From: Lytechinus pictus
Taxonomy: Eukaryota
DNA length: 64,000 nucleotides
Direction: 5' to 3'
Assembly: GCF_037042905.1 (NCBI RefSeq)
Contig: NC_087250.1
Location: 11,718,001-11,782,000 of the forward strand
Below, one piece after another: positions 279 through 52,915 of this stretch (position 1 is its first letter; the number at the start of each line of letters is the position of its first letter). A program made the position numbers and the translations under genes. The notes beneath the pieces are model-generated. The model had not been told where the DNA came from and ran no database searches. It worked only from the letters and a program-made list of their open reading frames with translations.

Positions 279-1523
279 AAGCTACGTACGCCTATGACTG
301 CAACAAGCGCATTGTCCCTGTCAAGGTGAACGAACTATTCAAGGCGAGAGGCTGGCTGGGAGGTATAACTGCCGGAAAGATCTACTACCCTGTCCGTGCT
401 GTAGACGAGGTGCCCGAACAGCTTCCAAGGATCATTGAGCTAGAGATTGAGGAGGAGCTGCAGAAGAATCCAGATGCCCAAGCAGGTGAGGGTGCACTAG
501 CTCCTTCGTAATTCTGTTTAGGGATATCGCTTAGTCTGCAGGCACAGATGATGATTGAAACTTTGATCCCCAAGTGGGTCTTCACACAAGACTAGCACAT
601 ACAAATTTCTGTTTCAAAGTCACTGTAGGCTGCGCATTCAGACCCCCTAAACTCGAGTGAACTGTTTGCACAGTAAACTAGATATCGTCAGTCCTCATAA
701 TAAATTGAACATATATCACCATCATTATCGTCATCATAACCAAAATTTTCATTAACAACACTGTCATAATGGTAATTGCTACCTTCCTCGCAAACCGTTG
801 ATGCGTCCGTTTTCCCAGATACCGAGTTCAAGTTAAAGAACCTCTTTATATATTCTGAACTTTCACTCACCATGATTACGCATGATTATGCATTTTTTAA
901 TGAATATTCAATTTTGTGGTCCTTTGCACTTCAACGTCAATTGTTAACAGTATTTGGTCATAAATATGGATAAACAAATCAAAGATGTCTAAACAAATTT
1001 TAACAGATTTATTGGATTTAGTTTTATCAGTACTTTTTTAAATACTTGATCTTGACAAAGCAGACAGTAGGTATAACGGCTCATATAATTTACCCATTTG
1101 TTATGGATTTAAAAAAAAAAAACCAAGTGAACCAAACTAAAGAAACATATGCCAAACTTTCATATCTGGGCTTACTTTAACCAGAAAATCACTTTGTAGG
1201 CTTACATTATTATGAAATACTATTCCTAACCACTTTCCTTCGATGACAATATTCGACCTTTCTCAGGTGCACGAATCAGCGGCCAAGTTGAAACGGAACC
1301 GGAAGTCGATAGCTGGGATCCGCCGAAAGTCCGCCAGTGGCTCACATCCAACGGCGTCAGCTCAACAAACGAGAGTTTGCAGAACCTTACAGGGTTGCAA
1401 TTGCTGCAGTTAAAGAAGCAGCTCGCAACGGCTCCAGATACATTCTACCAATCAATGAAAGAAGATCTGAAGGTCCCCTATATGGAGGTGCTCTCCCTGG
1501 CCGCAGCACTGGAGAAGCTGTGA
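279..1523 (+). CDS. ARM-TIR-SAM family paralogue copy 0, 3' part only: join(279..485,1267..1523), TIR C-terminal half plus SAM-like domain
   Basis: Acceptor atccatAG|279, donor 485|GTgag, acceptor tctcAG|1267, stop TGA 1521-1523. Exon 279-485 reads (E)ATYAYDCNKRIVPVKVNELFKARGWLGGITAGKIYY. The last exon (absent from the ORF track) reads GARISGQVETEPEVDSWDPPKVRQWLTSNGVSSTNESLQNLTGLQLLQLKKQLATAPDTFYQSMKEDLKVPYMEVLSLAAALEKL*. Both are clearly homologous to exons 4 and 5 of the downstream copies; upstream exons lie outside the window. Confidence 0.9.
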
Positions 1524-2247
1524 AAGGAATAACCTTGTGATCTAAACTTCATGTATTGTGAATCAAAGGGACCGTAATCTCAAGTTTGGTTTAACCAATG
1601 CCATGGTCTAAGATTGAGCAAAAAATTATTGGAATTGAAAAATATAAAAATGATGTTGGCATTGTTTGTTTCTAATTTTTTATTAGGCCATTTTTTCGTG
1701 ATTTAATGGTAAAGGAGATAATTTGTGCTATTATTCCCAGACAGCTGTGGATGAAATGAGTGCCAAATGTGTTGATTATTCGAATCTCTGCTGTTAAAGT
1801 TCTGTCAGTGTCGCACTTAAAGAGCTTACTTTAAACCCGAGTTCAGAGCATACTGGGCAATTGAGTTTATGGCGATAGATATGTGTATTTACAAAATTTA
1901 CTATCAAGCAATAATTTTAGAATATGCAGACGTCATGTTTCAATGATTATGAAGATAGTCGAGAAAAAAGTGTTAAGTGCCTGGACTAGTGTTTCTCTTT
2001 CTGGCCAGAGTTTCGAAAACATTCCATTTTAGCGGGTAGATAGGGATGGCTATTTGAACTCAGTGCTAGCAAATCTCGAATAATTTTGGTTAATCAACAA
2101 AATATGACCAACGGCTTTAGGTATTTTATGGGGACCTGGTTATGAAGATTTATTTTAGCAGCATAGGCCGAAAATGCATCGACTTTATTTAGAATTCGGA
2201 TCGCTGGATGACCGGACAACCGCTTATTGAAAATCGCTTATAGTGTA

Positions 2248-6206: not shown

Positions 6207-6461
6207 GAAACCGAAAGGCGCTGGCCAACGTCGTACCGCATTTCGTTGCCAAGTGATAAATATACACCAGCGTTCCTATTGTCAGTGCATAGACGAATGC
6301 GTTTCGTGAAGAGAGAGTTCGCCAATTTGTAAACGCTCATCATCAATGCAACCAATATACTGTACATAAGCATGATAAGGGAATGGGTCTAAACAGCGAG
6401 GAATGCAATATATTTTGCTGCTAGAATGAAGCCATTCCATATAAGATATGTAATGGTATGT
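6207..6461 (+). promoter_or_regulatory. Candidate promoter and non-coding first exon of copy 1 (homologues at about 16116-16362 and 29075-29320; diverged homologue about 45920-46212)
   Basis: GAAACCGAAAG (6207-6217), GATAAATATA (6255-6264), Inr-like TCAGT (6282-6286), donor-like GTATGT (6456-6461). Coding exon 1 is preceded by a pyrimidine tract plus AG in every copy, implying an upstream exon. No transcript evidence. Confidence 0.45.
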
Positions 6462-6632
6462 ATTTAATACACATTTTCTTCTATCTTTAATGATAATGTA
6501 TTTTGTGTAGACTTCTGTCACGTTGTTGTACTGATTGAATTTACGGTAATTGATAACAACATCATTGGTCATCCAGATTTCCAGTAGGCCGAAGCTATGG
6601 AAGCTTAAAAGTGCCACCCAGATGTTCGTATA

Positions 6633-6923: not shown

Positions 6924-7131
6924 CCTTTTAATCTCTTTAACCAATCCAACTTTTTTGGGATGGACTTGCCTTTAAGGTATCTCAAGGCAAGAGGAGGGCA
7001 TTTCGAAAAAAGGTCAAGGGGGTGGGGTAAAAAAAAACAACTTTTTAGGGCCTACCTTAATGAATAATGATAACTTTCTGTTCATCTTTTTTTTTCCTAC
7101 GATTTTATAGGTTTCGTGACGTACGCTAAAG

Positions 7132-8347
7132 ATGGGTTCTTCTGCAAGTGCTAGAAGGATTCCAACAGTGCAAAAGATCGCAGAACCTCCATCTGTCGAA
7201 AACTCAAACGCTAGCCGAGAAGTAGGAGGCCGCGATGAAGCGGACAGTGGTCCAGTGGCACCGGAATTAATAACTGAGCCATCCAACCCGGCAGCTCCCG
7301 CTGACACCCTGTCCGACATTTCAAACGTTCTGCATGTTGACTCTGCAGCTGCAAAGGCAAAACGAATCGAGGAATTTAGTGAGGAGATCAAACAATGTCT
7401 TATCCCTGTAAAAGAAGGTATCCAGCACATCCAGGAATGTGACAATTTCCCATGTGACTCGTGCAACGGGCACATGAGGGGTATCAACAAAGTTTCTGGG
7501 AACAAGAACCTTGACCGCAACGCTGCCGCGGACGGGTTGGCCATTGACACGGATTACTGCAAAATTTTTAGCTATAGATGGTCAAAGGGGGAATTGTTAC
7601 AGCAGATTGAGGATGCTGATGCTGATGCTGAAGAATTGACGCCCCAAAAGAAAACAATATTTACGTTTTATATTGAACTGTTAGCTTCCAGTTGGAACTT
7701 CACCGATGAATCCGATTACTTCTGTCTGCAAATGGAAGAGGACGGGTGCCTTGCGTTGATATCGGACTGGTTTTTACATCTGATCGAGGGTTCAAAGTCC
7801 AGAAATAAATGGGTAAATAATCTAGTCTTCGATGCAATGAACGTAATTTACAATTCATGCATGAGAGTGCGGGCGTTGGCTCCAAGCCACCACCGAGTCG
7901 TACCTGCTCTTCAGAGGTTTAGCGAGTCAAGAGGAAGCCTCACCCAGACAATCGCGTTCATGACGTTGGCTAAGCTAGTCAAGAAAGAAGAAGCCGACAA
8001 GCTATCCACCAATACCAAATGCATTTTTTTTCTATTGTCTCTTCTTAGGAAATGCCTCTCAAATCGAGACCACAAGTCCTCAATTAAAAGACAAACATCT
8101 AAGAAGAACTTTGTCACCGTAATAAGTCTAAATGCAGAAGAACTCGTGAAATCCGTAGAAGAGCTAGCCATTAATGATAACAACAAAAAGCTCATTGTTA
8201 CAAGAGGTGGGATCCACCTCCTCGGGAAATTGCTCAAACCAAAATGTACCAACGAAGAGAAGACCTCTGCCGCGAATACCATCTGGAGACTGGCATTCCT
8301 CAAAGAAAATAAAGAAAAACTTCGCAAATTCCAGGGTATCATATACA
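7132..8347 (+). CDS. copy 1 coding exon 1 (N-terminus, Cys motif, ARM region)
   Basis: ORF 7132..8361; acceptor ttttatAG|7111 upstream of the ATG; donor tacA|GTgagt. Confidence 0.92.
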
Positions 8348-11300
8348 GTGAGTACCTTTAAAATATTATGGATTGGCACACTAACATTGAAAACTATTAT
8401 GATAAAATAATCGGCAAAGACGCCTTGTATATACGTATAATGAACAATTAAAATCAAACAAGTAGCTGGACTAGTGATCCATCGGCAATTAGACTTTGCA
8501 TCTAAATTGGATAAACCAGGAAAATGGAACACCATGAGTAATAACTAACCTATATGGTGTATCCCGTTTATTTATATTAATTCGAAGGCAAGGGAATACT
8601 AAAAGAAATTGGAAACCTATGCACAAAGCGCTAGTTTCCTTATAGTTTATGGCTAAAAAAATACGAATTTAATCACTTTACTAGATCTGACCGAGTATTC
8701 CCAGAGTGAGCACGAAAAACTCCGTACTGCCTGCATGGGAGCTCTCTTCGAGATCTACGAATCCAGACTTCCCGAAAACCTGAAGAGCAAGAAAACCGAC
8801 GATGGGTCACCGCAGAGGGCGCCACCCGACACTGCAAAGTCAACTGGACACATCATGCTCAGTTACAAATGGGAACACCCGTCCAAACCTGTGATGAGAG
8901 AGTTCAAGAATGAGCTTCGAAAGAGAGGATACGCTGTATGGATGGATGAGGACCATATGAGTAAGTCCAGGGACCCTTGACACAAAGATTAGCAATTATA
9001 CGCCTGATTTTCACAATTAACATTACATTCAGGTCAATGAAATCAACCGTAACAACATTTTATACCATAATTGCTGAACTTTATGTTATGGGCCCCAGAT
9101 CAATCATGAAATCCATTATGAAGTCATAATGTAAAATAAGAACAACTTTTTAGATGTACGTGTCAGGAATTATGTCACCCCGGCCTTTATTGCCATCTAT
9201 TCATAACTAAATTCGCTATACCCATATCCCCTTCCTTCTTTCTCTTCTTTATCATCATCATCTTCTTTCTCCTCCTTCTCTTTCTATTATTCTACATTTC
9301 ATTTTCCTACCTGTGGTTGTCTCTTCAAAAATCAATTTCTCTTCAATACTTTCAAATTTCACATAATTTATGTTACATTTTTGTTGTTGTTTCAGTGGGT
9401 GATAAAATTGGAGCGATGGCAGAAGCTGTAGAGAATGCTGATATGATAATTGCCTGTATTACAAGTGGTTACCAGGACAGTCAAGACTGCAGAACAGGTG
9501 ATAATTTTTTCCTTTCCCACTCATCATCATCATCATCATCGCGATCAACATCAGTCATCACTGCAATCACCATCATCATCATCATGACCATCATCATCAT
9601 CATTACCACCATCATTATCATTATCACCGTCATCATCATCACTATCATCATCATCATGACCATGACCATTATCATCGTCAGCACCATCATTTTATCATCA
9701 TCACCATCATCATCATCATTATCATCATCATCATCTCAGTCGACATCACATCATCTTCATTTTCATCATTGTCACCATCACCATGATCATCATCATCATC
9801 ATCATCACCACCACCAGCAACAACATCATCATACCAACACCATCACCATCCTTATCACCATCATCATCATCATCACCCTAATCATCTTCATCATCATCAT
9901 CTTCATCATCGTCATCAACATCATCACCACCGTCATCAACTTCATCATCACCATCATTATCATCATCACCATCATCATCTTCATCATTATTGCAATCGAC
10001 CTCATCAACAACGCATGGCAGGTAATTAAAAAGAACAACAATTTGGTCCAGAAACAAACACAGATCACATATAATAGGAACTTCAACAGCAAAGTAAGAT
10101 AACACCCTATACTATACCAGCTCTGTATTGTTAGTGCAGTGGCGTACAGATGGGGGAGGGGGCCCTTCGGGGTGCTTCCCCCATTATTTTTTTTTTCACC
10201 GACGACCTAGACAAAAATGATAACAGGAAAGAAAAGTAAAGAGAGGTTGGGTGAGATATATTTTTTCTGGATATTATGTCAAAATCTATTCCAAAATTTG
10301 ATTTTTTGTACTTGAAGTTCTGATATTTTTATGAATTTTGCCCATGAAATGCCATATCTGACCCCCATCAATTTTGTTTTTGCGCGGGGGGGGGGGGGGG
10401 GGGGTTCATTACGCTACTGAGTATGTGGAAATATTCCAAAATGAAAAAAAAAGGATGCCTGCTACTGACGTGTACAGTCACTGTTGACCCCTTTCCAAAT
10501 GCATCATTAACGTATACGTATTGAAAGTTCCTACTTATTTCAAAGTCTCTCATTTAATAATTTCAGAAGCGTCTTATGCATACGAATGCAAGAAGAAGAT
10601 CATTCCAGTAAAAGTTAGGCCCGACTTCAAAGCTTCTGGCTGGCTAGGGGGTATTACGGCCGGGAAGATATACTACATCGTTCAAAAAGCAGAGCTCGTC
10701 TCAGAAGTACTTCCTAGCATCATAGAGAAAGAATTCGCTGTGCAGAAAGAAACAATCCAGAAGGTGGATGCTACAACGATAGGTATGTGAATCTGAATCA
10801 GCCTATTTCCCAGCCTTTCCTAACAAAAAACCAATGAGGAACGAGCTGTACGCGAGGGAAAATGTAAAATGTTCAATTTGAAATTAACGATCTGGGCCCC
10901 GTAACACAACGCTTGGAGATGAATAGAAAATATGCAAGAACGCTTCTGATTGGTTCCTGGTCAGTATTTTAAACTAAAGTGCGCGTGTAACATTGATCTT
11001 GATTGGTCAGTGCATTTTGCGATTGATCGCTAATCTTTGTGTTACGGAGCTCAGGTCAAGTTTTGAAATGGTCGGGTTTCAACAAGTACGTTGATGAGAA
11101 ATGCAATAGCCCCTCCCCCTTTACCAACTTGTTCCACAGCGTATGCTTATGGACATTGAACCGGGATGAATTAAACACATGTATTATGTATGTGATGGGA
11201 GAGTGCCAAAAACACACACACACATACATAACATATAGAAATAAAATCTATTGCATTTTATTCATACAATAGTTAACTGTTTATCAATAATTTCTTCTAC

Positions 11301-11727
11301 CTCTGTATCATTGTATTTACGTAATACTAGCGATTTCCCATTGCAGATATTTTGAAAAATGCCTAGTTTTCTCTTTACCTGTTCTCCAATACTTTCATAG
11401 GTGCAAAGTCGGATACAGCTATTCTAATTTTGAGTGCATTCCTTTTTCTTGATAGGGTCACAACTGCCGGAACAGGAACCGAAGTCACCTCCAACAGAAT
11501 CCCAAGTACCCGGGTGGGATTCAAAGAGGGTCCAGGATTGGCTGGCGGCGAACAACATCACATCACGCAACAAAGCGCTTAAATCCATCAACGGAACTCA
11601 GTTGCTTCAGCTCAAGAAACAGCTTACCACCGTACCACAGGCGTTCTACCAGTCCATGAAAGATGATCTGAAGGTTCCATACCTTGACGTTCTTTCCCTC
11701 GCAGCTGCACTTGAAAACCTTGAATAG
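7132..11727 (+). CDS. Myristoylation-motif ARM-TIR-SAM protein copy 1 (693 aa): join(7132..8347,8685..8960,9396..9497,10567..10782,11456..11727)
   Basis: All four introns are GT-AG and phase 1; exon lengths 1216+276+102+216+272=2082 nt, open to TAG. N-terminus MGSSAS; ARM consensus LAINDNNKKLIVTRGGIHLLGKLL...AANTIWRLAF; TIR_2 motifs HIMLSYKW, GYAVWMD, AMAEAVENA, YQDSQDCRTEASYA, IIPVKV, GWLG; SAM-like VPGWDSKRVQDWL...INGTQLLQL. Confidence 0.93.
8685..8960 (+). CDS. copy 1 coding exon 2 (last ARM repeat, linker, TIR start)
   Basis: ctAG|8685, 8960|GTaagt; same 276-nt exon in all four full copies. Confidence 0.92.
9396..9497 (+). CDS. copy 1 coding exon 3 (TIR core)
   Basis: ttcAG|9396, 9497|GTgata; MGDKIGAMAEAVENADMIIACITSGYQDSQDCRT. 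Confidence 0.92.
9520..10010. repeat. (CAT/CAC)n microsatellite in intron 3 (also 20190-20745, 32522-32890)
   Basis: Direct inspection. Confidence 0.95.
10137..10420. mobile_element. hAT-like MITE in intron 3, shared by copies 1-3 (about 20877-21141, 35693-35949; relative at about 53530-53945)
   Basis: CAGTGGCGTA start and TACGC(T/C)ACTG end at the same intronic position in three copies. Confidence 0.7.
10567..10782 (+). CDS. copy 1 coding exon 4 (TIR C-terminal half)
   Basis: tttcAG|10567, 10782|GTatgt; EASYAYECKKKIIPVKV...GWLGGITAGKIYY. Confidence 0.92.
11456..11727 (+). CDS. copy 1 coding exon 5 (SAM-like domain)
   Basis: gatAG|11456 to stop TAG 11727. Confidence 0.92.
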
Positions 11728-17330: not shown

Positions 17331-17768
17331 GAACAGATGATCAGATGACAAGATCTTGCATCTCGTCATGTCTACATCTTATAGTACAGATGATAAGATG
17401 GCGAGATCTCGGATCTCGTCATGTCTACATCCTGTGGGAGAGATGATCAGATGGCAAGATCTCGGATCAAAGATCTTGCCGTCTGATCATATCTTCTAGA
17501 AGATGTAAGCATAACGAGATTCGAGATCTTGCCATCTGTTTTTTTTTATCCAATCAAACTTTTTGTTGGGATGGATTTGCCCTTTAAGATATTTCAAGGC
17601 AAGAGGAGGGCATTTTGAAAAAAAAAGGGCCAATGGGGTGGGGTTAAGAAAACGACATTCAGCGAATAACTAACCCGACATTCTTTTTAGGGCCTACCTG
17701 AACGAATAATGATGACTTGCATCCTTTTTTTTCTTACGATTTTATAGGTTTCGTGACCTATGCTAAAG

Positions 17769-20700
17769 ATGGGTTCTTCTGCAAGTGCTAGAAGGATTCC
17801 ACCAGTGCAACAGATCGCAGAACCTCCATCTGTCGAAAACTCAAAAGCTAGCCGAGAAGTAGGAGGCCACAATGAAGCGGACAGTGGTCCAGAGGCACCG
17901 GAAGGAATAACTGAGCCATCCAACCCGGCAGCTCCCGCTGACAACCTGGCCGATATTTCAGACGTTCTGCTTGTTGACTCTGCAGCTGCAAAGGCAAAAC
18001 GAATAGAGGAGTTTAGTGAGGAGATCAAGCAATGTCTTATACCTGTAAAAGAAGGTATCCAGCACATCAAGGAATGTGACGATTTCCCATGCGACTCGTG
18101 CAACGAGCACATGAGGGGTATCAACAAAGTTTCTCGGAACAAGAACATTGACCGCAATGCTGCCGCGGACGGGTTGGCCATTGACACGGACTACTGCAAA
18201 ATGTTTAGCTATAGATGGTCAAAGGGGGAATTGTTACAGCAGATCGAGGATGCTGATCCCACTGAAGAATTGACGCCCCAAAAGAAAACGATATTTACGT
18301 TTTATATTGAACTCTTAGGTTCCAGTTGGAACTTCACCGATAAGTCCGAGTACTTCTGTCTACAAATGGAAGAGGACGGATGCCTGGCGTTGATATCGGA
18401 CTGGTTTTTACATCTGGTCGAGGGTTCGAACTCCACGAATAAATGGGTTGATGATGTAGTCTTCGATGCAATGAACGTAATTGATAATTCATGCATGAGA
18501 GTGCGGGCGTTGGCTCCAAGGCACCACCGAGTCGTACCTGCTCTTCAGAAGTTCGGCGAGTCAACAGAAAGCTTGACCCAGACGATCGCGTACATGACGT
18601 TGGCTAAGCTAGTCAAGAAAGAAGAAGCCGACAAGCTATCCACCAATACCAAATGCATTGTATCGCTACTGTCTCTCCTGAAGAAATGCCTCTCAAATCC
18701 AGACCACAAGGCCTCAACTAGAAGACAAACATCTAAGAAGAACTTTGTCACCGTAATAAGTCTAAATGCAGAAGAGCTCGTGCAATCCGTTGAAGATCTA
18801 GCCATAAATGATAACAACAAAAAGCTCATCGTTACAAAAGGTGGGATCCCACTCCTCGGGCAATTGCTTAAACCAAATTGTTCCATCGAAGAGAAGACCT
18901 CTGCTGCGAATACCATCTGGAGACTGGCATTCCTCAAGGAAAATAAAGAGAAACTTCGCAAAGACCAGGGTATCATATACAGTGAGTACCTTTCAAATAT
19001 TATGAATTGGCACAATAACATGGAAACCCATTATGATAAAATAATCAGCAAAGACGCCTTCCATATACGTAGAATGAACAAGCAAAATCAAACAACATAA
19101 GTAGCTGGCCTAGCGATCCATCGGCAATTAGACCTTGCATCTGAATTGAATAAACCAGGAAAAATAAAACACCATGAGTAATAACGAACCTATTTGGTGT
19201 ATCCCGTTTATTTAGATTAATTTGAAGGTAAGAGTGTCAATTAAAATATAGATCAGTTACAAAATTGGAAACTAATGCACAAAGCGCTAGTTTCCCAATT
19301 GTTTATTGCTAAAAAATTACGATTTTAATCACTTTGCTAGATCTGACCGAGTATTCCCAGAGTGAGCACGAAAAACTCCGTACTGCTTGCATGGGAGCTC
19401 TCTTCGAGATCTACGAATCCAGACTTCCCGAAAACCTGAAGAGCAAAAAAACCGACGAGGGGTCACCGCAGAGAGCGCCACCCGACAATGCAAAGTCAAC
19501 TGGACACATCATGCTCAGCTACAAATGGGAACACCCGTCCAAACCTGTGATGCGTGAGTTCAAGAAGGAGCTTCGAAAGAGAGGATACGTTGTATGGATG
19601 GATGAGGACCATATGAGTAAGTCCAGGGACCCTCAACACAAAAGTTAGCAATTGTATGCATGATTTTCACAATTAACATTACATTCAGGTCAATCAGATC
19701 AACCGTGAACAAAAAATTATACCATGATTGCTATGCTTTATGTTACGGGCCCCAGATCAATCTTAAAATCCATTACGATGTCCTTACATTAACTGTGGTA
19801 AAATAAGAACAACTTTTAGATGTACGTGTAATGAATTATGCCACCCCAGGCTTTTATTGCCATCCATTCATTACTAAATTCGCCATCCCCATATCCCCTT
19901 CCTTCTTTCTCTTCTTTATCATCATTACCTTCTTTCCCCTCCTTCTCTTTCTATTCTTCTACATTTCATTCTCTACTCGTGGTTGTCTCTTCCAAAATCC
20001 ATTTCTCTTCAATACTTCCAAATTTCACAAACATTTATGTTCAATTTTTGTTTGTTTCAGTGGGTGATAAAATTGGGGCGATGGCAGAAGCTGTAGAGAA
20101 TGCTGACATGATAATTGCCTGCATTACAAGTGGTTACCAAGATAGTCAAGACTGCAGAACAGGTGAGAATTTTCTCCTTTCCAACTTCTCATCATCATCG
20201 CAATCAACATCAGTCATTACTGCAATCATCATCATTATCATTACCACCACCACCATGATCATCATCATCTTCAGCACCATCATTTCATTACTTCATCATC
20301 ATCGTCATCCTCATCATTACCACCATCATCATTATCATCGTCATCATCATCATCATCATCATCATCTCAGTCGACATCACATCATCACTGCAGTCATCAT
20401 CATCACTATCACCAAGACCATAACTATCATCATCATCACCACCACCATGCAGCAAAACCATCATCATACCACCACCATCACCATCCTTATCACCTTCATC
20501 ATCATCATTATCAGTTTTCAGAACTGAAGTGGGTTCCCTGNNNNNNNNNNNNNNNNNNNNNNNNNNNNNNNNNNNNNNNNNNNNNNNNNNNNNNNNNNNN
20601 NNNNNNNNNNNNNNNNNNNNNNNNNNNNNNNNNNNNNNNNNNNNNNNNNNNNNNNNNNNNNNNNNNNNNNNNNNNNNNNNNNNNNNNNNNNNNNNNNNNN

Positions 20701-32809: not shown

Positions 32810-32840
<31 letters not shown>

Positions 32841-35800
32841 CTATCATCACCATCATCATCACCATCATCATTATCATCATCATCTCCATCATTTTTTTAT
32901 TTTCATTTTTATTGTAATATATTTATTCAGGATAAAGAAAAAGGTCAGCCGAGGCTGTTTTACATCATGGTCCTGACACACACAAAATATATACTATGCA
33001 CAAAATTATTTTAAAAAGAGGTAACGACTACAATGGCTCACAATATAAAAGTAATAAACGGTCTGACCTAGAAGGAAAACGGGATAAAAGAAGGAAGAAA
33101 GACGAGAGAGAGAGAGAGAGAGGAAGGAAGGTAAGAGAAAGATAGGGAGAAAAGGAGGGAGAAAGAAATAAAAGACGGTCGGTCAATTATTGAACAATAC
33201 ATATTATGTCATTAAACGGTAGATTTAAAATAATGGCATTTATACTACGCTTAAAAACTTCAAGAGATTTAGCATTCTGAATATCAGATGGAAGGCTATT
33301 CCAAACCAAGCCGCCAGCATATTTAAAACAACTCTTAAAACATTCGAGAGTAGGCTTTGGTAAAACGACGTTCAACGTATTGGCAAGTCTAGTACCAAAA
33401 GAGTGTCTTTCAAAAACCATTTCCACTTCATTGCACATTCGGACTGGGGCCTTTCCATGAATACAGCTATACATTATACAAGCTAAAAAGTAATAAGATC
33501 TGATATCAAGAGTTTGCCATTTAAGTGAATTAATTATACTAAGGCCATGTACATTGTAATCAAAATTCCCTGTAACTATGCGTGCAGCCCTTTTCTGTAA
33601 ACGTAAAAGTGTATTTCTATGATGTAAAGAACAGTTTCCCCATACGGAACAAGAATAATCAAAGGTTGGTTGTATGGTGCATTTATATATTTTATTGAAA
33701 ACTTCCTTGCGTAAAAAATTACTAATTTTCATTAGTGTAAATATCTTGTACATGTTGTAACTTAAAGATTTAATTAAATATTTGATATGAGCATCCCAGC
33801 ATAGTTTACTATCTAACATGATGCCTAGGTATTTTGTGCTTTGTACTTGTTCAATGATATCATTATTAATATACACCTTCAATTTAAGATCATTATTATT
33901 CCTTGAATTATTGGCCAAAATCATGACATTACTTTTTTCGCATTAATCCTTAATCTGTTACAGTAATACCATTCATTAGTAGAATTCAAATCTGCTTGAA
34001 GCTTGGATGTAATAACATTAATATCTTTATCAGACACATATATTACAACATCATCAGCGTAAATATTACATATACTATTCTTTAAACAATCTGTAATATC
34101 ATTCATAAAAATTAGAAAAAGGGAAGGACCTAAAAAAATACCTTGAGGAATTCCTATGGATATATCTTTTGTTTTAGATTGTTTACCTTGAGAAAAAAAC
34201 TGCTTGTTTTCTGTCTGAAAGAAAACTTTGAAACCAAAGGAGTTCAGTGTCAGAAATGCCATAATTATTCAGTTTAAAAAGTAATAGTTTATGTTCAATA
34301 CAATCAAAACATTTAGAAATATCAAGGAAACATGCACCAACATTTTCTCCTTCATTAAAAGATTCGTACCAATCATCAATAATTCTATCTAAGCAAGTAT
34401 TTTGGTTGAGTGATTTGGCAAGAAGGCATATTGGTCAATATTAATAAGATCGTTCGTCTGTAAATAAGATAAAAATTGGGATTGAACTTCCATTTCCACT
34501 AGTATAGCAATATGACATACAACACAAATTGGTCTATAATTAGAAATGTCATTGGTGTCATCTACACCCTTATAAACCGGTGTAGTAGTTCTTTAGATTT
34601 TCCAATCATCAGGTAATGTTCCAGACATCAAACTTGCGTTGAACAAATTGGTTAAAGATTCATAAATAAAAGGAACTGAACTACGAAGTAATTTAGTATC
34701 AAAGTCTAAAATATCAAGACTACTCAGATCAGACAAAAGAGAAATATTTTTATATGTGCTATCAGGCGTAATTGGTTTGAAGGTAAAAGAGTGGATACTG
34801 GTTGGATGATTCCATGATAAAGTGTGATGATTAAAAGTTTCTGAAAATTTGTTTTCCAACGTTCACGGAAAAATCATTAAATTTATCACTATCCAAATTT
34901 GATGGTAGGATAGAATCTGTTTTGTCTCTACCTGTAATTTTGTTTAATTCTTTCCAAAATTTTCTACTATCGTTGCTATATCTGTTAGACAGTGAATCAA
35001 ATATGTTTTCTTACTTTTACGTATTTCCTTAGTAACTGAGATTCGAATAAAGCGATATTCTGTAAGTAAATATAGAAGTTTTAAGGTATCATATTTTTCT
35101 TTTAAAAATTCCGTCTATAAATGGGTTTAATAATGTTTGAATTCATCCATGGACAGTGTCTGTCCTTAACCCGACATTCCTTGATAGGAGCANNNNNNNN
35201 NNNNNNNNNNNNNNNNNNNNNNNNNNNNNNNNNNNNNNNNNNNNNNNNNNNNNNNNNNNNNNNNNNNNNNNNNNNNNNNNNNNNNNNNNNNNNNNNNNNN
35301 NNNNNNNNNNNNNNNNNNNNNNNNNNNNNNNNNNNNNNNNNNNNNNNNNNNNNNNNNNNNNNNNNNNNNNNNNNNNNNNNNNNNNNNNNNNNNNNNNNNN
35401 NNNNNNNNNNNNNNNNNNNNNNNNNNNNNNNNNNNNNNNNNNNNNNNNNNNNNNNNNNNNNNNNNNNNNNNNNNNNNNNNNNNNNNNNNNNNNNNNNNNN
35501 NNNNNNNNNNNNNNNNNNNNNNNNNNNNNNNNNNNNNNNNNNNNNNNNNNNNNNNAACATCATCAACTGTGCATGGCAGGTTATTAAAAAGAGCCACCCT
35601 TTTGTCCAGAAACAAACAGACCACATATTCTCGGAATTTAAACGGCAAAGTAAGATGACACTCTATACTATACTAGCATTGTATAGTCTATGCTGTGGCG
35701 TAGAAATGAGGGGGGGGGGTTAGGGATGCTTCACCCCCCAATATTTTGCACGACCTAGACCCCCCAAAAATGATAAAAGGAAAAAAAAGTAAAGAGAGTA

Positions 35801-37107
35801 GGGTGAAATATTAGATTATTTTCTGGATATCATGTCAAAATCTATCCCAAAATTGTATTTTTGTAATAAAAGTGCTGAAATTTTAAAGATGTTTACCCAA
35901 TATGCTATATCTGGCCTTCTCAATTCTTTGTGGTTGATTACGCCACTGAGTCTGTGGAAGTATTCCAAAATGAAAAAGGGATGTCTGCTACTGATGTGTA
36001 AGTCACTGTTGTCCCCTTTCCAAATGCATCATTAACGTATACGTATTGAAAGTTCCTACTTATTTCAAAGACTCTCATTTAATAATTTCAGAAGCGTCTT
36101 ATGCATACGAATGCAAGAAGAAGATAATTCCAGTGAAAGTTAAGGCCGACTTCAAAGCTTCTGGCTGGCTAGGGGGTATTACGGCCGGTAAGATATACTA
36201 CATCGTGCAAAAAGCAGAGCTCGTCTCCGAAGTACTTCCTAGTATCATAGAAAAAGAATTCGCTGTGCAGAAAGAAACAATCCAGAAGGTGAATGCTACA
36301 ACGACAGGTATGTGATTCTGAATCTATGCACCCTATTCCCCACCCCTTCCTAACAAAAGCCCATGTGGAACGAGATGTACGCGAGGGGAAATACATAATT
36401 TTTTAAATTTGAAATCAAAGACCAGGTCGAGTTTCTACATGAAATCTCGACCATTTAAAAATGGTCGCGTTTTTACAAATTCTTTATTGAGAAATGCAAT
36501 AGTCCCCCCCCCCTTACCCACTTGTTTCACAGCGTACGCTTATGGACATTTAACCAGGATGAACTAAACACATGTATTACGTACGTCACGGGAGAGTACA
36601 AACACAGATATAGACATAGAAATAAAATTCATTGCATTTTTTTCATACAATAGTCTATCAATAATTTCTTCCACCTCTGTCTTAATGTATATACATAATG
36701 CTAACGATTTCCCACTGCAAACGTTTTGAAAATTGCTGAGTTTTAACGTTACCTGTTCTCCAATTGCGACATTTTCATAGGTGCAAAGTCGAATAAAGCT
36801 ATTCTAATTTCGATTGCATTCCCTTTTCTTTATAGGGTCACAACTGCCGGAACAGGAACCGAAGTCACCTACAACAGAATCCCAAGTACCCGGATGGGAT
36901 TCCAAGAGGGTCCAGGATTGGCTGGCGGTGAACAACGTCACATCACGTAACAAAGCGCTTAAATCAATCAACGGAACTCAGTTGCTGCAGCTCAAGAAAC
37001 AGCTTACCACCGTACCACAGGCGTTCTATCAGTCCATGAAAGATGATCTGAAGGTTCCATACCTTGACGTTCTTTCCCTCGCAGCTGCACTTAAAAACCT
37101 TGAATAG
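30106..37107 (+). CDS. Myristoylation-motif ARM-TIR-SAM protein copy 3 (692 aa): join(30106..31318,31677..31952,32394..32495,36092..36307,36836..37107)
   Basis: Same exon sizes and splice sites, frame intact. Intron 3 is enlarged by an antisense LINE and contains two N gaps, so contiguity across this intron relies on scaffolding. Confidence 0.9.
32891..35192 (-). mobile_element. Degenerate CR1/L2-group LINE (frameshifted RT) in intron 3 of copy 3
   Basis: Broken ORFs 33187-33924, 33921-34262, 34593-34859, 35102-; motifs GIPQGIFLGPSLF, YADD (34050-34061), KYLG, LQKRAARI; 3' end abuts the (CAT)n tract; 5' end lost in N gap. Confidence 0.92.
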
Positions 37108-45018: not shown

Positions 45019-45065
<47 letters not shown>

Positions 45066-45068
<3 letters not shown>

Positions 45069-46429: not shown

Positions 46430-46437
46430 TTAAAAAG

Positions 46438-47988: not shown

Positions 47989-50900
47989 ATGGGGTCTGCG
48001 GCAAGTTCAAGGAAGAGTCGGCCAGCCGATAAATTTGAAAAAGTTGAACCAGTCCCAGATTCTGCAGGAGCAGCTACAGAAAGCAACAACAAAACAGATG
48101 GGTCTCCTGGAAAACCACAATCGGCTGATTCAACCAATCCTGCAGAAAGTGAAACTGTTCAAACTGCCGTAGGTACACTTGGAGGAATTTCCGATGGCTC
48201 TTCGAGACCTATGGATGACATATCAGATGCTCTGCTTGTTGATTTTGCAGATGTAAAGTTGAAACGACAGGACCACAAGATACGCGACAAGATCGAACAG
48301 TGTCTCATTCCTGTTAAAGAGAGTATCCGATACATTCGGGAGTGCAACGAATTTAACTGTACCTTATGCAACAAACATATGAGGGATATCAACTTATTTT
48401 CTCGTGACTCTAACAATAGCCTCACAGCAACGGCAAACGCAATCGGCGTTGACACAGACCATTGCAAAATGTTTACCTATACCTGGACAAAGGGAACAAA
48501 GATACAGGAGATTGAAAATGCGCAACCGAGTGAAGAACTTCCATCCGAAATCAAAGAGATTTTTACCTTTTACATGGACCTCCTAGGCTCGACCTGGAAT
48601 TTCACCGACAAGTCTGACTTCTTCTGCTTGCAACTTGAGGAAGATGGATGTCTCTCCGTCATTGTCGACTGGCTTTTACACCTAGGTGAGAAGGGGTGTG
48701 CGATGAACAAGTGGGTTGAAGATATGGTCTTCGACGCAATGAACATTTTGGAAAACGCATGTAGGAGACTACCCGCATTGGCACCTAGGCATCACCGCGC
48801 GGTTCCTGGTATTCAGAAGGTTTGCGAATCAACGGACAGTCTGACGCAGACAGTTGCGTTTATGACTTTAGCAAGGCTAGTGAAGAAAGAAGAAGCAGAC
48901 AAGCTGTCCACGAATTATGAATGCATCGTATCGCTACTGTCTCTCTTGGAGAAGTGCCTGTCGGATCCAAAACACAAGACGAAGGTCACACGGCGGACCT
49001 CGAAGAAGCGTTCTTCAACTGTGATAAGTCTGAAGGCAGTCGAGCTCCTCCAGTCTGTAGAGGAACTGGCTATTAACGACAACAACAAGCAGCTCATTGT
49101 AGCCAAAGGGGGAATTCCAATTCTTGGGAAACTACTCGAACCAAAGTGTTCGAAGGAGGAGAAGACATCTGCAGCCAACACAATCTGGAGACTTGCATTT
49201 CTGAAGGAAAATAAAGAGAAACTCCGCAAAGAACAATCTATTATTTACAGTAAGTAAGACTCTTCATCTCGATTTCATTATCATTGGGGAAATGCGTCTC
49301 ATGGGCTCACTTTCGTATCTAACAACAGTAATAATAATACTACTACTACTAATAATAATACGCAACATTTTTACAGCGCCTAATACAATGCTTATAAGCG
49401 TTACATACTACATCCATGGTTCCGACTCTCGTTTTTAAACCAGTAGTTATGGGCTTGAATCTTGGGCATGGCGTTATTGTCAGTTGAGGTCAATGGGAAG
49501 CACGGCCGTAATACTTTCTTAAATGCACAAATCGCTTGAAAATAAGTGAGGGCCAAGGCTGATGCAATAATAATAGGCCCACACTTCTGAATATAGAAGG
49601 CGCCATATCATTGATATATAAAATCCATATCCTATTATCAGATGTGACTGAGAATTCCCAAAGTGAGCACGAAAATCTCCGTACAGCCTGCATGGGAGCT
49701 CTCTTCGAAATTTACGAATCCAGACTTCCCGAAAGCCTAAAGAACAGGAAAACAGCTGACGAGTCACCGCAGATGGCGCCAGTGGACACTGCAAAATCAA
49801 CTGGACACATCATGCTCAGCTACAAATGGGAACACCCGTCCAAACCTGTGATGAGAGAGTTCAAGAAGGAGCTTCGAAATAGAGGGTACACCGTATGGAT
49901 GGATGAGGACCATATGAGTAAGTCTACATTAAGGAAATATGAAATTGAATGCTTGTTTTTAACCTACCGAAGAATTCACCCCTGCCCCCTTTTGTTTTCA
50001 TTAGAACAAGTTATTTTCACGTATAAATTCCTTTTCCGTTTCTTCTCTGTGTTTTCTCTTACTTCTTAATCGTTTTTTCTTCTTTTTCTTCTCTTTTTTT
50101 ATCAAAGTTATTATTCTCCCTGTCTGTATTCCATTAGTGATCTCAATATTAAAATGCCCATAACTTTCTTACTTTGGGGGGTATCGTCTTAAAACTTTCA
50201 TTGATCTTGATTTTTCCCTTTTAGAAGAATTCGACTATTCTAATAGGATTCATTCTCATTTGATGTCGTTTCTCTTCTGTTCCTTGTTCCAGTGGGTGAT
50301 AAAATCGGTGCCATGTCCGAAGCGGTTGAGAATGCGGACATGGTGATAGCCTGCATTACACGTGGCTACCAAGACAGCCAAGACTGCAGAACAGGTAACT
50401 GAGATACTTCCCTTACTTAGATCAAGTACAAGTTTAAATTTTGTTGTTGCATGCGTTGCACACTTTCCTCCTGACTTGGGAGTTTTCGATTTGCACGTCA
50501 TCCACATTTAGGGACAGGACGTGTACAAAGTCGGAAAATAGTATTACAAACGGACATACTGATGTTGTCGACATAAACTCATCAATATTTCACACTATTT
50601 TCCGTAGCATGTTGCGTTCACGGTAAGGAAAGTCACTGGTCAGGAGTGATGGTCAGTTACACACATGCGATGGACGAACAATTAGTGCCTATCCACTAAC
50701 CTGGCGAATTTGGGAATCGTTATCGCTGTAATGAATAGTTGACATGTCAGTCGCTATTATTAGATATTGGCGGCTATTGTCGTCTCTGCCCGTGTAACGA
50801 CAGTTTGGATTAATATTCTGAACCCAATTTTTCTTGTTACTTCCACAGCTAAATCTAACATTCCTTTCATTTCTTAATGTAAATTCGTCCTGGCGAACTT

Positions 50901-52915
50901 GAAAAAGACAACATCAATACGTTTAAGGAGAATGAAACCTTTGGAACAAGATAGCTTGTGTGAAAACAGAAAAAATCCAAGAAACAGATCAACGAAACTT
51001 TGAGAAAAATCGAACAAATAATGAGAAAGTTATGAGCATTTCAATATTGCGATCACGAATGCTATGGAGATCCTCACATTGGCAATGCGACAAAGATGTG
51101 TGATGTCACTTGTGAACAACTCTCACCATTACTTTAGTATTCACTTAAACTGCCTTTTTTATCACATCTATCAGTAAATCATGTGTTCTTTCTATAAGAG
51201 GGCATGTATAATACAGATTAAAAAAAATACCTCATGGATAAAGAGTTTGTATCACCTTACGAAAAAAGCAAAACGAGACATTTTGGGGGTATTTTAAAGT
51301 CCATCAAAGGGAAAGTTGTTCACATTGGACATCACACATCCTTGTCGCATTGCCGACGGGATGATCTCAATAGCATTAGTGATTGCAATATTCAAATGCT
51401 CATAACTTTCTCATTATTTGTCCGATTTTTCTCAAACTTTCTATGTTCTTATTCTTTGATTTTTCTGTTTCGACACAAGCCTATTTGTTCCAAAGGTTTC
51501 ATTCCCCTTTAATATATATATATATATATTATCGCCTGCGACAGTTGCTAAGTGTTTAATTTCATTTAAGATGTAGGGTAGGGGTTGCAAATGTTTTTAT
51601 GTTCGGTTTAGGATTATGTTTAGGGTATAGTGTTAAACTCCGTGTTGAAGTTGGTCATTCGATTAGTGTGTGGAATTTAGAGCTGAGCAAACGGGTGATT
51701 TCAAGTTTAGTGTTGACCTTTTGTTGTTGGTGTTACCAAACATAAAATGCAGATGGTCCCGAAATGTCACTCACCAGTTGTTGAGATGTGTTGAGATGTC
51801 AATAATGTGATCTGGATCAGTATTACAAACTCTGAATAAGTTTTGGAAATAGGGGAAGGAATCAAAATTCCAACACCAGCACCAACACCAAGGCCAACAC
51901 CGGACTTGAAATCACGATCGTCGCCGGTGCAGTCGTCATGGAACCTAAGTATTATACCTGTTTATCCATTTTCAGAAGCGTCCTACGCATATGAATGCAA
52001 GAAAAAGATCATTCCGGTGAAAGTGGCGGACGACTTCAAAGCTTCTGGCTGGCTAGGGGGTATTACTGCAGGGAAGATATACTACATCGTGCAAAAACCC
52101 GAGCTCGTCTCAAAGATACTACCTAGCATTATAGAAAAGGAGTTCACAGCGCAGAGAGATATCGTTCAGAATACAATAGCTGTTACGCCAGGTATTTATC
52201 ATGCTTCGTTTCATAAACCTATTTGCTATCAGAAATAGACTGACACACACAAACACACACACACAAGGAAGAAGGGGAAATGCGTGTGTAAAACAAATTG
52301 GGGGAGACAGAGGATATACAGAGAGAAGAAAAGAGAGAGCGAATGAGTGCGAACATGAAAAGCAAAGTTCTCCATACGTTTATATTTCAGGTGAATGGTT
52401 AATCAACAATTCTCTACGATATGCTATCTGATCATGCTGATAGAACAACTTTCCTTGATTTTCGTCCTCTGTGTAGCACTGTTACTGCTACATATGTCGG
52501 ATATAAACCTGACAATTCCTTTCTTGAAACGCGCACCTAATTTTCACGGCTCGAAAATAAAATATTTAGCCAATGTGAACTTGAATTATTGCAACGCACA
52601 TTTTACTACCTATTTTTTTTCTGCGTTTCCTCTTCGTTGACAGGTCTTCCACCGCCAGACCAGGAACTGAAGCCGCCTCAATTAGTTTCTCAAGTACCCG
52701 GATGGGACGCTAAGAGGGTCCAGGATTGGCTAGCAGAAAACAACGTCACGACACGAAACAAGGCACTGAAAGCGTTCAATGGAGTCCAGTTGCTACAGCT
52801 TAAGAAACAACTGTCTACAGCGCCCCCAACTTTCTATCAGTGTATGAAAGATGATCTTAAGGTTCCATACCCCGATGTCCTTTCGCTTGCAGCTGCACTG
52901 GAGAATCTTGATTAG
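47989..52915 (+). CDS. Myristoylation-motif ARM-TIR-SAM protein copy 4, divergent (708 aa): join(47989..49249,49642..49917,50293..50394,51976..52191,52644..52915)
   Basis: MGSAASSRKSR start; donors and acceptors at homologous positions (A|GTaagt 49249, AG|49642, 49917|GTaagt, AG|50293, 50394|GTaact, AG|51976, 52191|GTattt, AG|52644); 1261+276+102+216+272=2127 nt. Exon 3 (not in ORF track) reads MGDKIGAMSEAVENADMVIACITRGYQDSQDCRT. Confidence 0.93.
50923..51512. mobile_element. MITE with long TIRs and TTAA flanks (Kolobok-like) in intron 3 of copy 4
   Basis: ttaa-ggagaatgaaacctttggaacaa... / ...ttgttccaaaggtttcattcccct-ttaa; inverted symmetry extends more than 150 bp. Confidence 0.8.

What the first reader, a model, noticed from the sequence alone, without database searches (positions are those of the whole stretch)
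279..52915. Tandem array of at least 5 intact genes for an N-myristoylated ARM-TIR-SAM protein: a SARM1-like domain set in rearranged order with the putative NADase Glu retained
Seen: four complete five-exon genes and one partial copy splice cleanly to 692-708 aa proteins with ARM repeats, a TIR_2-type TIR (HIMLSYKW..VWMD..AMAEAVENA..YQDSQDCRTEASYA..IIPV..GWLG) and a C-terminal SAM-like domain; none has a frameshift or stop. Established: SARM1 (ARM-SAM-SAM-TIR) is an NAD+ hydrolase whose ARM domain senses metabolites and autoinhibits, SAM oligomerises, and TIR uses a Glu in helix alphaC; bacterial and plant enzymatic TIRs share this Glu in an S-x-x-C-x-x-E context, matching SQDCRTE here. Inference: an expanded family of membrane-tethered sensor-executioner or second-messenger-producing TIR enzymes of invertebrate innate immunity, not the SARM1 orthologue. 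ARM-TIR genes are known to be expanded in some invertebrates, but I know of no functional description of this myristoyl-ARM-TIR-SAM arrangement.
Basis: partly seen in the sequence, partly recalled or inferred. Interest (0 to 1): 0.9.

Follow-up and report, generated by a model that had tools for sequence, protein, structure and literature searches.

The report
Tandem ARM-TIR-SAM genes, sea urchin
Five intact, spliced neighbouring genes in the painted sea urchin encode probably lipid-anchored armadillo-TIR-SAM proteins. They belong to a widespread but functionally unstudied animal family that keeps the key catalytic residue of NAD-cleaving immune enzymes such as SARM1; whether they are enzymes is untested.

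Summary
The window is Lytechinus pictus, C6:11718001-11782000. It carries four complete genes (A 693 aa, B 692, C 692, D 708) and the last two exons of a fifth (copy 0, 648 aa), whose other exons lie intact just upstream. All introns are GT-AG, no copy has a stop or frameshift, and every N gap falls in an intron or between genes.

Transcript contigs from two studies confirm all four coding introns of gene A and show an extra non-coding first exon. The copies are under purifying selection. Phylogeny and the matching array in L. variegatus argue that they are true paralogs, not haplotypes.

The domain reading also holds:
- a disordered N-terminus starting MGxxxS;
- a canonical beta-catenin-like ARM solenoid;
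- a TIR_2 domain whose nearest solved relatives are NAD-cleaving TIRs, with the alphaC Glu kept in 159 of 162 aligned family sequences;
- a C-terminal SAM closest to SARM1 SAM1.

The novelty is smaller than claimed. This is the known "ARM-TIR" class and forms one cluster in a 2026 survey of animal TIRs. In that survey four isolated TIRs of the cluster showed no activity in E. coli. The family also lacks the Trp that sits four residues before the Glu in SARM1. NADase function is therefore plausible but unproven. I rate it a new member of a known kind, of moderate interest.

The parts
279..1523 (+). Copy 0, last two coding exons (279-485 and 1267-1523). Exons 1-3 lie upstream of the window at C6:11713354-11716828.
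   Evidence: tblastn with the L. variegatus orthologue P0016 gave 94-100% identity apart from the short exon 3 (79%). The spliced model is 648 aa, intact and GT-AG throughout.
6397..6449 (+). 3' end of a non-coding first exon of gene A. Its 5' limit is unknown. It is spliced to 7111.
   Evidence: A transcript contig of run X1 shows a 6449>7111 joint with GT..AG ends. It rests on one contig, which carries 6 unplaced letters at the joint.
7111..11727 (+). Gene A (LOC129263364). CDS exons: 7132-8347, 8685-8960, 9396-9497, 10567-10782, 11456-11727; 693 aa.
   Evidence: The model comes and is 100% identical to P0001. All four coding introns appear as GT..AG joints in contigs of runs X1 and X2, and coverage is confined to exons.
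7132..7152 (+). N-myristoylation motif MGSSASA (Gly2, Ser6).
   Evidence: It matches PROSITE PS00008. The start codon has a strong Kozak context (A at -3, G at +4). 49 of 151 family proteins that start with Met carry the motif, 44 of them with S/T at position 6.
9497..10568 (+). Codon of Glu532, the putative catalytic Glu, split by intron 3 (G at 9497, AA at 10567-10568).
   Evidence: The split is seen. Glu is conserved in 159 of 162 aligned family sequences. It aligns with the Glu of HKE in TIR-1/SARM1 and of WDE in Cat1. It lies in model helix 527-538, which is alphaC.
17760..22429 (+). Gene B (LOC129262950). CDS exons: 17769 (or 17760)-18981, 19341-19616, 20061-20162, 21289-21504, 22158-22429; 692 or 695 aa.
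   Evidence: The model comes and is identical to P0170. The gap at 20541-20716 lies inside intron 3, and its flanks are collinear with A.
30097..37107 (+). Gene C (LOC129262947). CDS exons: 30106 (or 30097)-31318, 31677-31952, 32394-32495, 36092-36307, 36836-37107; 692 or 695 aa.
   Evidence: The model comes and is identical to P0171. Intron 3 (3596 nt) holds two gaps and about 2.2 kb found nowhere else in the window.
47989..52915 (+). Gene D, the divergent paralog. CDS exons: 47989-49249, 49642-49917, 50293-50394, 51976-52191, 52644-52915; 708 aa.
   Evidence: D is 67-69% identical to A, B and C. Its L. variegatus orthologue (89% identity in exon 1) lies directly downstream of the B orthologue.

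Best explanation
This is a genuine, transcribed tandem array of five paralogous genes of the metazoan ARM-TIR(-SAM) family.

**Architecture (shown).** Each protein has:
- a roughly 60-residue disordered N-terminus beginning MGxxxS;
- a canonical armadillo solenoid of about 350 residues;
- a TIR_2 domain of the enzymatic structural type, with the alphaC Glu;
- a linker;
- one C-terminal SAM domain.

**Mechanism (inferred).** The protein is co-translationally N-myristoylated and sits reversibly on a membrane. The ARM groove binds a protein or peptide ligand and holds the TIR apart. On activation, the SAM domain and the membrane concentrate the TIR domains. The TIRs then form a composite active site that cleaves NAD+, giving cADPR or ADPR, or depleting NAD locally. 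This is SARM1-like logic with a different domain order and probably a different kind of ARM ligand.

The array itself is an ordinary lineage-specific expansion. Copy 0, B and D predate the split between L. pictus and L. variegatus. A and C arose afterwards.

**What the confidence covers.** The figure given is for the enzymatic mechanism. The descriptive part (a real five-gene array with ARM-TIR-SAM architecture) I hold at about 0.9.
For: **Array is real**
- The gene models are intact and the splice joints appear in transcript contigs from two studies.
- dN/dS is 0.17-0.36 overall, 0.09-0.19 in the TIR and 0.04-0.22 in the SAM.
- The A clade (100/100) and the C clade (99/95) are reciprocally monophyletic and each holds its own older-assembly variants. 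B and copy 0 group with L. variegatus genes.
- L. variegatus has same-strand tandem genes that include the B and D orthologues.

**Domains**
- TIR_2: E 8e-17, 62 bits against a cut-off of 28.
- ARM: Vac8 E 3e-6; Z 20.5 to designed ARM proteins; Z 18.7 to beta-catenin at rmsd 4.6 A over 290 residues.
- SAM: five helices at pLDDT about 90. The family profile hits SARM1 SAM1 at E 2e-6 and the SMS1 SAM at 3e-6.
- 130 of 154 family members carry the SAM.

**Enzymatic-type TIR**
- The best profile hit in the PDB is C. elegans TIR-1 (6e-9), followed by Cat1 (2e-7). The Glu aligns in both.
- The top 50 Foldseek hits are almost all NAD-cleaving TIRs: SPARTA, SARM1 (TM 0.62-0.73), RPP1, RPS4, RUN1, AbTir, ThsB and BtpA. 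No MyD88 or TLR appears.
- Glu is kept in 159 of 162 sequences. The equivalents of SARM1 Y568, D594 and G601 are conserved.
- TIRs of neighbouring clusters with the same HIMxSY...WMD...WLG signature do make cADPR or deplete NAD: a 639-aa oyster protein, herring and coelacanth.

**Myristoylation**
- The motif is enriched at least tenfold across distant relatives, including 12 that start MGC.
Against: - No activity has been measured for these proteins.
- In Hurieva et al. 2026, Table S4, all four isolated TIRs tested from this same TIR cluster (Chlamydomonas, amphioxus, spotted gar, ascidian) have an empty "Active" field. The same assay also left the known enzymes RUN1, RPS4 and RPP1 blank, and the constructs lacked the SAM domain.
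- The Trp four residues before the Glu (SARM1 W638, whose mutation greatly lowers kcat/Km; PMC8266388) is N, S, A or D in the family and never W.
- That survey reports the Glu in some TLR subclades too, so the Glu alone does not separate enzymes from scaffolds.
- The ARM looks like a peptide-binding ARM, not like the SARM1 ARM.
- B and C have an in-frame ATG three codons upstream, which RefSeq uses. That start would block myristoylation, although its Kozak context is weak.
- L. pictus copy 0 (MGNLVII) fails the strict motif.
- Two raw RNA-seq runs showed no exon reads, so expression there is low.
Confidence: 0.45

Rival explanations
1. The proteins are non-enzymatic, membrane-anchored TIR adaptors, comparable to TRAM/TICAM2. 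The myristoylated protein would bridge the large sea-urchin TLR or IL-1R-like repertoire to downstream partners recruited by the ARM and SAM domains. In this reading the conserved Glu is structural or part of an interface.
For: - Four TIRs of this cluster were inactive in E. coli.
- The W638 equivalent is absent.
- The ARM is of the protein- or peptide-binding type.
- The genome holds at least 88 TIR_2 matches, mostly TLR-like long ORFs, so potential partners exist.
- From my own knowledge, not tested here: TRAM is an N-myristoylated TIR adaptor.
Against: - The structural neighbours are enzymatic TIRs, not MyD88, TLR or TRAM.
- The best sequence matches are SARM1/TIR-1 and Cat1.
- The Glu and the BB-loop Asp and Gly are nearly invariant across a family that reaches green algae, and TLR signalling is not known there (my own knowledge).
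- The negative assay has known false negatives.
Confidence: 0.3
2. Part of the array is an assembly artefact. A and C would be two haplotypes of one locus placed in tandem, so the true copy number would be four.
For: - The region is broken into short contigs by eight gaps.
- A 394-nt stretch is duplicated at 99.7% identity on either side of the gap at 27679-27866.
- The older annotation had two A-like and two C-like models, so copy number changed between assembly versions.
- dS between A and C is only 0.083, in a species group known for high heterozygosity (my own knowledge).
Against: - The A clade and the C clade are each monophyletic with their own roughly 2% variants, while A and C differ by 6.5% at the protein level.
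- Whole 10-12 kb units, including the intergenic DNA, are repeated at distinct spacings.
- L. variegatus also carries several A/B/C-type genes in tandem.
- Even if this were true, four paralogs would remain.
Confidence: 0.1
3. The TIR acts on a substrate other than NAD+, for example as a nucleic-acid or nucleotide 2',3'-cyclase or nucleosidase as reported for some plant TIRs. Alternatively it only binds a nucleotide signal.
For: - The family replaces the Trp at the W638 position with small polar residues and has its own invariant Trp residues (W468, W491, W557). This suggests a remodelled pocket.
- Nucleoside 2'-deoxyribosyltransferases appear among the structural hits.
Against: There is no direct evidence. 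The Glu and the BB-loop geometry are those of NAD-cleaving TIRs.
Confidence: 0.1

Closest known systems
ARM-TIR class of invertebrate TIR-domain proteins (oyster, Aplysia and others), which is TIR cluster 'A0A0B7AZE4_1' in Hurieva et al. 2026 (bioRxiv 10.64898/2026.04.20.719644)
   Same: - The architecture is the same: an ARM (Pfam TPR clan) N-terminal to a TIR_2 domain that has Glu at the catalytic position.
- The TIR signature is the same: HIMxSYxW, VWMD, AMAxAVENA, SxxCRTE, IIP, GWLG.
- S. purpuratus, starfish, mollusc, cnidarian, amphioxus, gar and green-algal proteins are listed in that cluster.
   Different: The difference is in what has been described, not in kind. In the papers I could read, the C-terminal SAM, the conserved MGxxxS start and this five-gene Lytechinus array are not discussed. 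Gerdol et al. 2017 could not be read here.
SARM1 / C. elegans TIR-1 / Drosophila dSarm
   Same: - The same three domain types are present.
- SARM1 and TIR-1 are the best PDB sequence matches for both the TIR and the SAM.
- Human SARM1 is the top full-length Foldseek hit.
- The catalytic Glu and the equivalents of Y568, D594 and G601 are conserved.
   Different: - The order is ARM-TIR-SAM, not ARM-SAM-SAM-TIR, and there is one SAM rather than two.
- The N-terminus is a myristoylation motif rather than a mitochondrial targeting sequence.
- The W638 equivalent is missing.
- The ARM resembles beta-catenin and Vac8, not the SARM1 ARM.
- Activity is untested.
TRAM (TICAM2), an N-myristoylated TIR adaptor (from my own knowledge)
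   Same: It also has an MGxxxS-type N-terminus that tethers a cytosolic TIR protein to membranes.
   Different: - TRAM has no ARM or SAM domain.
- TRAM-type and TLR-type TIRs are not among the structural neighbours.
Vac8 (yeast), an acylated armadillo-repeat protein
   Same: It is the best PDB sequence match for the ARM region (E 3e-6; Z 17.8). From my own knowledge, it is also N-myristoylated.
   Different: It has no TIR or SAM domain. The resemblance is confined to the generic ARM repeats.

Membership tests
SARM1 orthologue | Domain order ARM-SAM-SAM-TIR with tandem SAM domains | tested here: not met
   The order is ARM (about 82-432), TIR (459-592), then a single SAM (620-693).
SARM1 orthologue | Catalytic Glu (E642) in helix alphaC | tested here: met
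   E532 aligns with the Glu of HKE in TIR-1. It lies in model helix 527-538. It is conserved in 159 of 162 family sequences.
SARM1 orthologue | Trp four residues before the Glu (W638), which contributes to catalysis | tested here: not met
   The position is D528 in gene A. Across the family it is N 84, S 30, A 14 and D 12, and never W. The W638A effect is reported in PMC8266388.
SARM1 orthologue | ARM domain with an allosteric NMN/NAD+ pocket that autoinhibits the TIR | not tested
   The ARM aligns best with beta-catenin, designed ARM proteins and Vac8 (Z 18-20). No residue-level comparison with the SARM1 pocket was possible.
ARM-TIR class / TIR cluster A0A0B7AZE4_1 | TIR_2 domain above the Pfam gathering score | tested here: met
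   PF13676 scores 62.3 bits against a cut-off of 28, E 7.9e-17.
ARM-TIR class / TIR cluster A0A0B7AZE4_1 | Armadillo-type solenoid N-terminal to the TIR | tested here: met
   Vac8 E 3e-6 and ARMC4 E 1e-5. VIA Z is 20.5 to designed ARM proteins and 18.7 to beta-catenin over about 290 residues. The Pfam Arm and ARM_ARMC5 matches are only subthreshold.
ARM-TIR class / TIR cluster A0A0B7AZE4_1 | Family TIR signature and collinear full-length similarity to other members | tested here: met
   192 representatives match at E<=1e-30, most of them over residues about 180-692. The consensus and 46 matches the amphioxus, ascidian and Chlamydomonas sequences tested in Table S4. S. purpuratus proteins with the same layout are listed in that cluster.
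SAM domain | Five-helix bundle of about 70 residues with profile similarity to known SAM domains | tested here: met
   Helices at 626-635, 643-646, 650-662, 664-674 and 679-690 with pLDDT about 90. Profile hits: SARM1 SAM1 2e-6, SMS1 SAM 3e-6, liprin-beta 3e-7, ETV6 and Shank. Pfam SAM_3 is only subthreshold (16.7 against 22.6 bits).
SAM domain | Self-association (oligomer or polymer) | tested here: inconclusive
   The predicted homodimer of residues 618-693 gave no verdict. This is neither support nor evidence against.
N-myristoylated proteins | Met-Gly start matching G-{EDRKHPFYW}-x(2)-[STAGCN]-{P}, with Ser or Thr preferred at position 6 | tested here: met
   A, B and C read MGSSASA and D reads MGSAASS. 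49 of 151 family members that start with Met match. Caveats: B and C have an upstream in-frame ATG in a weak context, and L. pictus copy 0 (MGNLVII) does not match the strict pattern.
N-myristoylated proteins | Actual attachment of myristate by NMT | not testable with these tools
   This needs metabolic labelling or mass spectrometry.
Catalytically active (NAD+-cleaving) TIR | Glu-dependent NAD+ cleavage or cADPR production | not testable with these tools
   The only evidence is from the literature. Four isolated TIRs of this cluster were scored not active in E. coli, while related clusters (oyster, herring, coelacanth) were active. The RUN1, RPS4 and RPP1 controls were also blank.

The most novel reading that the evidence does not exclude
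The ARM-TIR-SAM family, conserved from green algae to ray-finned fish, would be a membrane-tethered TIR enzyme gated by a protein ligand. Its activity would need SAM-driven clustering, which would explain why the isolated TIRs scored negative. Its pocket would be remodelled, with no Trp at the W638 position and new invariant Trp residues, and might yield a distinct nucleotide signal. That would make it a second SARM1-like executioner or second-messenger system in animals, independent of SARM1, here expanded to five genes in a sea urchin.
Probability: 0.35. Interest if true: 0.8.

Novelty: new member of a known kind. Interest (0 to 1): 0.45.

Why it matters
Enzymatic TIR signalling is established in bacteria, in plants and for SARM1, and it is now being extended to other animal TIRs. 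This family has hundreds of 50%-identity clusters and reaches from algae to fish. It has a near-invariant catalytic-position Glu, a conserved lipid anchor and a SAM oligomeriser, yet no known function.

The sea-urchin array offers five natural variants with a constant TIR-SAM and a faster-evolving N-terminus and ARM, in an organism with tractable embryos. That makes one question directly testable: do the ARM and SAM domains and the membrane anchor gate a TIR enzyme?

The array itself is an ordinary lineage-specific duplication that RefSeq already annotates as "uncharacterized protein".

Tried and rejected
- **SAM self-association.** Complex prediction on two copies of the SAM (residues 618-693) gave no verdict (score 0.02). 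I do not use it either way.
- **Raw RNA-seq runs X16 and X17** (about 6% of each read) gave no exon reads. They therefore show nothing about starts, strand or induction.
- **Exon-wise Pfam scans** were too weak to call the domains. I needed the full RefSeq protein.
- **Single-sequence phmmer against the PDB** found only ARM proteins. The TIR and SAM relatives appeared only with a family profile.
- **Search for a canonical SARM1 in this genome.** I intersected exon-level TIR_2 and SAM_2 hits. No SAM-then-TIR neighbourhood turned up, only a TIR-SAM open frame on C17. The method is insensitive to split exons, so this says nothing about whether SARM1 is absent.
- **Gerdol et al. 2017** (the ecTIR-DC classification) is not held in the library. 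I could not check whether ARM-TIR-SAM has a name there.
- **My first exon-1 donor** (8335) was replaced by the stronger GTGAGT donor at 8347, which the transcript contigs confirm.
- **Haplotype artefact for B, D and copy 0** is rejected because each has an L. variegatus orthologue.


Full report
**Origin and layout.** The window is Lytechinus pictus, G000:C6:11718001-11782000 on the + strand; protein hits name the species. Direct-repeat analysis shows units of about 10.6-18 kb repeated four times, at 91-98% identity among the first three and 63-74% to the fourth. The quoted TIR motifs occur at four collinear places, plus a GWLG near position 350.

**Gene models.** I built spliced models by hand for the ungapped copy A and carried them over by homology.
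- A: 7132-8347, 8685-8960, 9396-9497, 10567-10782, 11456-11727.
- B: 17769-18981, 19341-19616, 20061-20162, 21289-21504, 22158-22429.
- C: 30106-31318, 31677-31952, 32394-32495, 36092-36307, 36836-37107.
- D: 47989-49249, 49642-49917, 50293-50394, 51976-52191, 52644-52915.

They encode 693, 692, 692 and 708 aa. Every intron is GT-AG, and there is no internal stop and no N in the coding sequence. A is identical to RefSeq XP_054757250.2. B and C equal XP_054756892.2 and XP_054756889.2 apart from a three-residue N-terminal extension. The partial copy at the window start (exons at 279-485 and 1267-1523) continues upstream of the window into a complete, intact 648-aa gene. A whole-genome search finds no further copies on this chromosome. 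More distant paralogs lie on C7, C15 and C19. The array therefore has exactly five genes.

**Gaps.** All eight N runs lie in intron 3 of B, in intron 3 of C (two runs) or between genes. They coincide with a microsatellite-rich part of intron 3. Their flanks are collinear with the ungapped intron 3 of A. The only junction not backed by continuous sequence joins C exons 1-3 to C exons 4-5. An older RefSeq model (P0172) carries C-specific residues in both halves, which supports that link. A 394-nt stretch duplicated at 99.7% identity around the gap at 27679-27866 looks like redundant contig ends.

**Transcription and splicing.** Contigs of two runs from two studies of the same organism cover the exons of A but not its introns. 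They contain all four coding-intron joints at exactly the modelled positions. One contig adds a further GT..AG joint, 6449>7111, which defines a non-coding first exon. Two raw RNA-seq runs, about 6% sampled, gave no exon reads, so expression there is low.

**Paralogs or haplotypes?**
- A, B and C differ by dS 0.08-0.13. D differs from them by dS of about 1.2. Omega is 0.17-0.36 overall, 0.09-0.19 in the TIR, 0.04-0.22 in the SAM and 0.33-0.71 in the N-terminus.
- In a maximum-likelihood tree, copy 0 pairs with L. variegatus LOC121416945 and B groups with LOC121416946 and LOC121416742.
- A and C form sister clades, each holding its own variants from the older assembly at about 2% divergence, with support 100/100 and 99/95.
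- In L. variegatus, three same-strand genes lie in tandem: an A/C-like gene, the B orthologue and a 707-aa D orthologue with 89% identity in exon 1.
- So copy 0, B, D and the A/C ancestor predate the species split, and A and C duplicated later in L. pictus. A haplotype artefact for A and C is unlikely but is not excluded by read depth, which I could not measure.

**Domains.**
- Pfam gives TIR_2 well above threshold and only subthreshold ARM and SAM_3 matches.
- An AlphaFold2 model built on 46 homologues (pLDDT 80) has residues 1-62 disordered, a helical solenoid at 58-430, a TIR at 459-592 and a five-helix C-terminal domain.
- The solenoid aligns with designed armadillo proteins (Z 20.5), beta-catenin (Z 18.7, rmsd 4.6 A, 290 residues) and Vac8 (Z 17.8). 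Vac8 and ARMC4 are also the best sequence hits. It is a canonical ARM. The SARM1 ARM is not among the best Z-scores, although full-length human SARM1 tops the Foldseek list.
- A profile of the TIR-SAM half hits C. elegans TIR-1 (6e-9), human SARM1 SAM1 (2e-6), the CRISPR-associated NADase Cat1 (2e-7), the SMS1 SAM, the liprin-beta SAM and ETV6.
- A separate TIR-SAM model (pLDDT 86) finds almost only NAD-cleaving TIRs among its top 50 PDB neighbours. No MyD88 or TLR appears.

**Catalytic residues.** In the profile alignments the family Glu (E532 in A) pairs with the Glu of HKE in TIR-1 and of WDE in Cat1. It sits in the predicted alphaC helix. Across 165 family sequences:
- The Glu is present in 159 of 162 aligned rows.
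- The equivalents of SARM1 Y568 (Y466), D594 (D493) and G601 (G499) are nearly invariant.
- The position four residues before the Glu, W638 in SARM1, is N, S, A or D and never Trp. W638A strongly reduces SARM1 efficiency (PMC8266388).
- The family instead has its own invariant Trp residues (W468, W491, W557).

**N-terminus.** A, B and C read MGSSASA and D reads MGSAASS, with a strong Kozak context. In B and C an in-frame ATG three codons upstream sits in a weak context; it is ACG in A and absent in D. Of 151 family proteins that start with Met, 49 match the myristoylation pattern. 44 of these have S/T at position 6 and 12 begin MGC. This is far above chance, so a lipid anchor is a family trait. 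L. pictus copy 0 does not fit the strict pattern.

**Family and literature.**
- An exhaustive search finds 3568 representatives at E<=1e-3 and 192 at E<=1e-30, most of them collinear over the ARM-TIR-SAM region. 130 of 154 with a TIR also have the SAM. Atlas neighbours are mollusc, rotifer and green-algal ARM+TIR_2(+SAM_2) clusters.
- "ARM-TIR" is already a named class in oyster and Aplysia immune-gene surveys (PMC4346834, PMC9334734). A TIR-SAM combination was noted in amphioxus (PMC2575513).
- Hurieva et al. 2026 (bioRxiv 10.64898/2026.04.20.719644) place S. purpuratus, starfish, mollusc, cnidarian, flatworm and green-algal proteins of this layout in one TIR cluster with Glu at the catalytic position.
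- They tested four isolated TIRs of that cluster: Chlamydomonas, amphioxus, spotted gar and an ascidian. All four have an empty "Active" field. An oyster 639-aa protein and fish TIR-only relatives from neighbouring clusters made cADPR or depleted NAD+. Known plant enzymes (RUN1, RPS4, RPP1) were also blank in that assay.

**Verdict.** The SARM1 comparison is justified as "works like", not as membership: the domain order, the number of SAM domains, the N-terminal signal, the W638 position and the ARM type all differ. Enzymatic activity is the best-supported mechanism, at about 45%. It is weakened by the published negatives and the missing Trp. A myristoylated scaffold adaptor is a serious rival, at about 30%. 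The immune role is inference. The array is a new, well-documented member of a known but uncharacterised family.

Noticed in passing
window 41152-41223 (-) and 45165-45236 (-): ARAGORN calls two tRNA-SeC genes with anticodon TCA. They lie in a roughly 300-nt direct repeat (41044-41338 matches 45056-45350 at 95.6%), between genes C and D.
   Followed up: partly
window 55129-58125 (-) and 58504-59265 (-): An uninterrupted 998-aa ORF carries an AP endonuclease domain and a reverse transcriptase domain (RVT_1, E 2e-32). It is a LINE-type retrotransposon downstream of the array. A 253-aa ORF upstream of it may be its ORF1.
   Followed up: partly
window 61547-63586: Two 99%-identical copies of a unit of about 1178 nt form a tandem repeat near the window end (families D10 and D11).
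   Followed up: no
window 27285-27678 and 27867-28260: A 394-nt stretch is duplicated at 99.7% identity on both sides of an assembly gap between genes B and C. It is probably redundant contig ends, and the region is poorly assembled.
   Followed up: partly
window 32802-35192: A contig piece inside intron 3 of gene C has about 2.2 kb with no counterpart elsewhere in the window, including intron 3 of A, B and D. It includes a 245-aa ORF (33187-33924, -) with no Pfam hit. It is either an insertion or a misplaced contig.
   Followed up: partly
window 6591-6787 and 10925-11121: Two short stretches have very high depth in RNA-type contigs (up to about 2400) and many loose ends. They look like interspersed repeats that are transcribed elsewhere in the genome, one upstream of gene A and one in its intron 4.
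   Followed up: no
window 9500-10000 (intron 3 of A) and the matching parts of B and C: This part of the intron is a long AT-rich, microsatellite-like repeat that reads as a spurious 261-aa Ile/Thr/His-rich ORF. All the intronic assembly gaps fall in it.
   Followed up: partly
G000:C17:1831752-1832444 (-), and C7:24828768-24838693, C15:9695031-9711553, C19:14203942-14206118: The same genome holds further TIR-SAM and ARM-TIR-SAM loci: a single 379-aa open frame with TIR_2 followed by SAM_2 on C17, and 30-36% identical paralogs of the array genes on C7, C15 and C19. Contigs C9/C27 and C2/C25 give identical SAM_2 hits, which suggests retained haplotigs.
   Followed up: no
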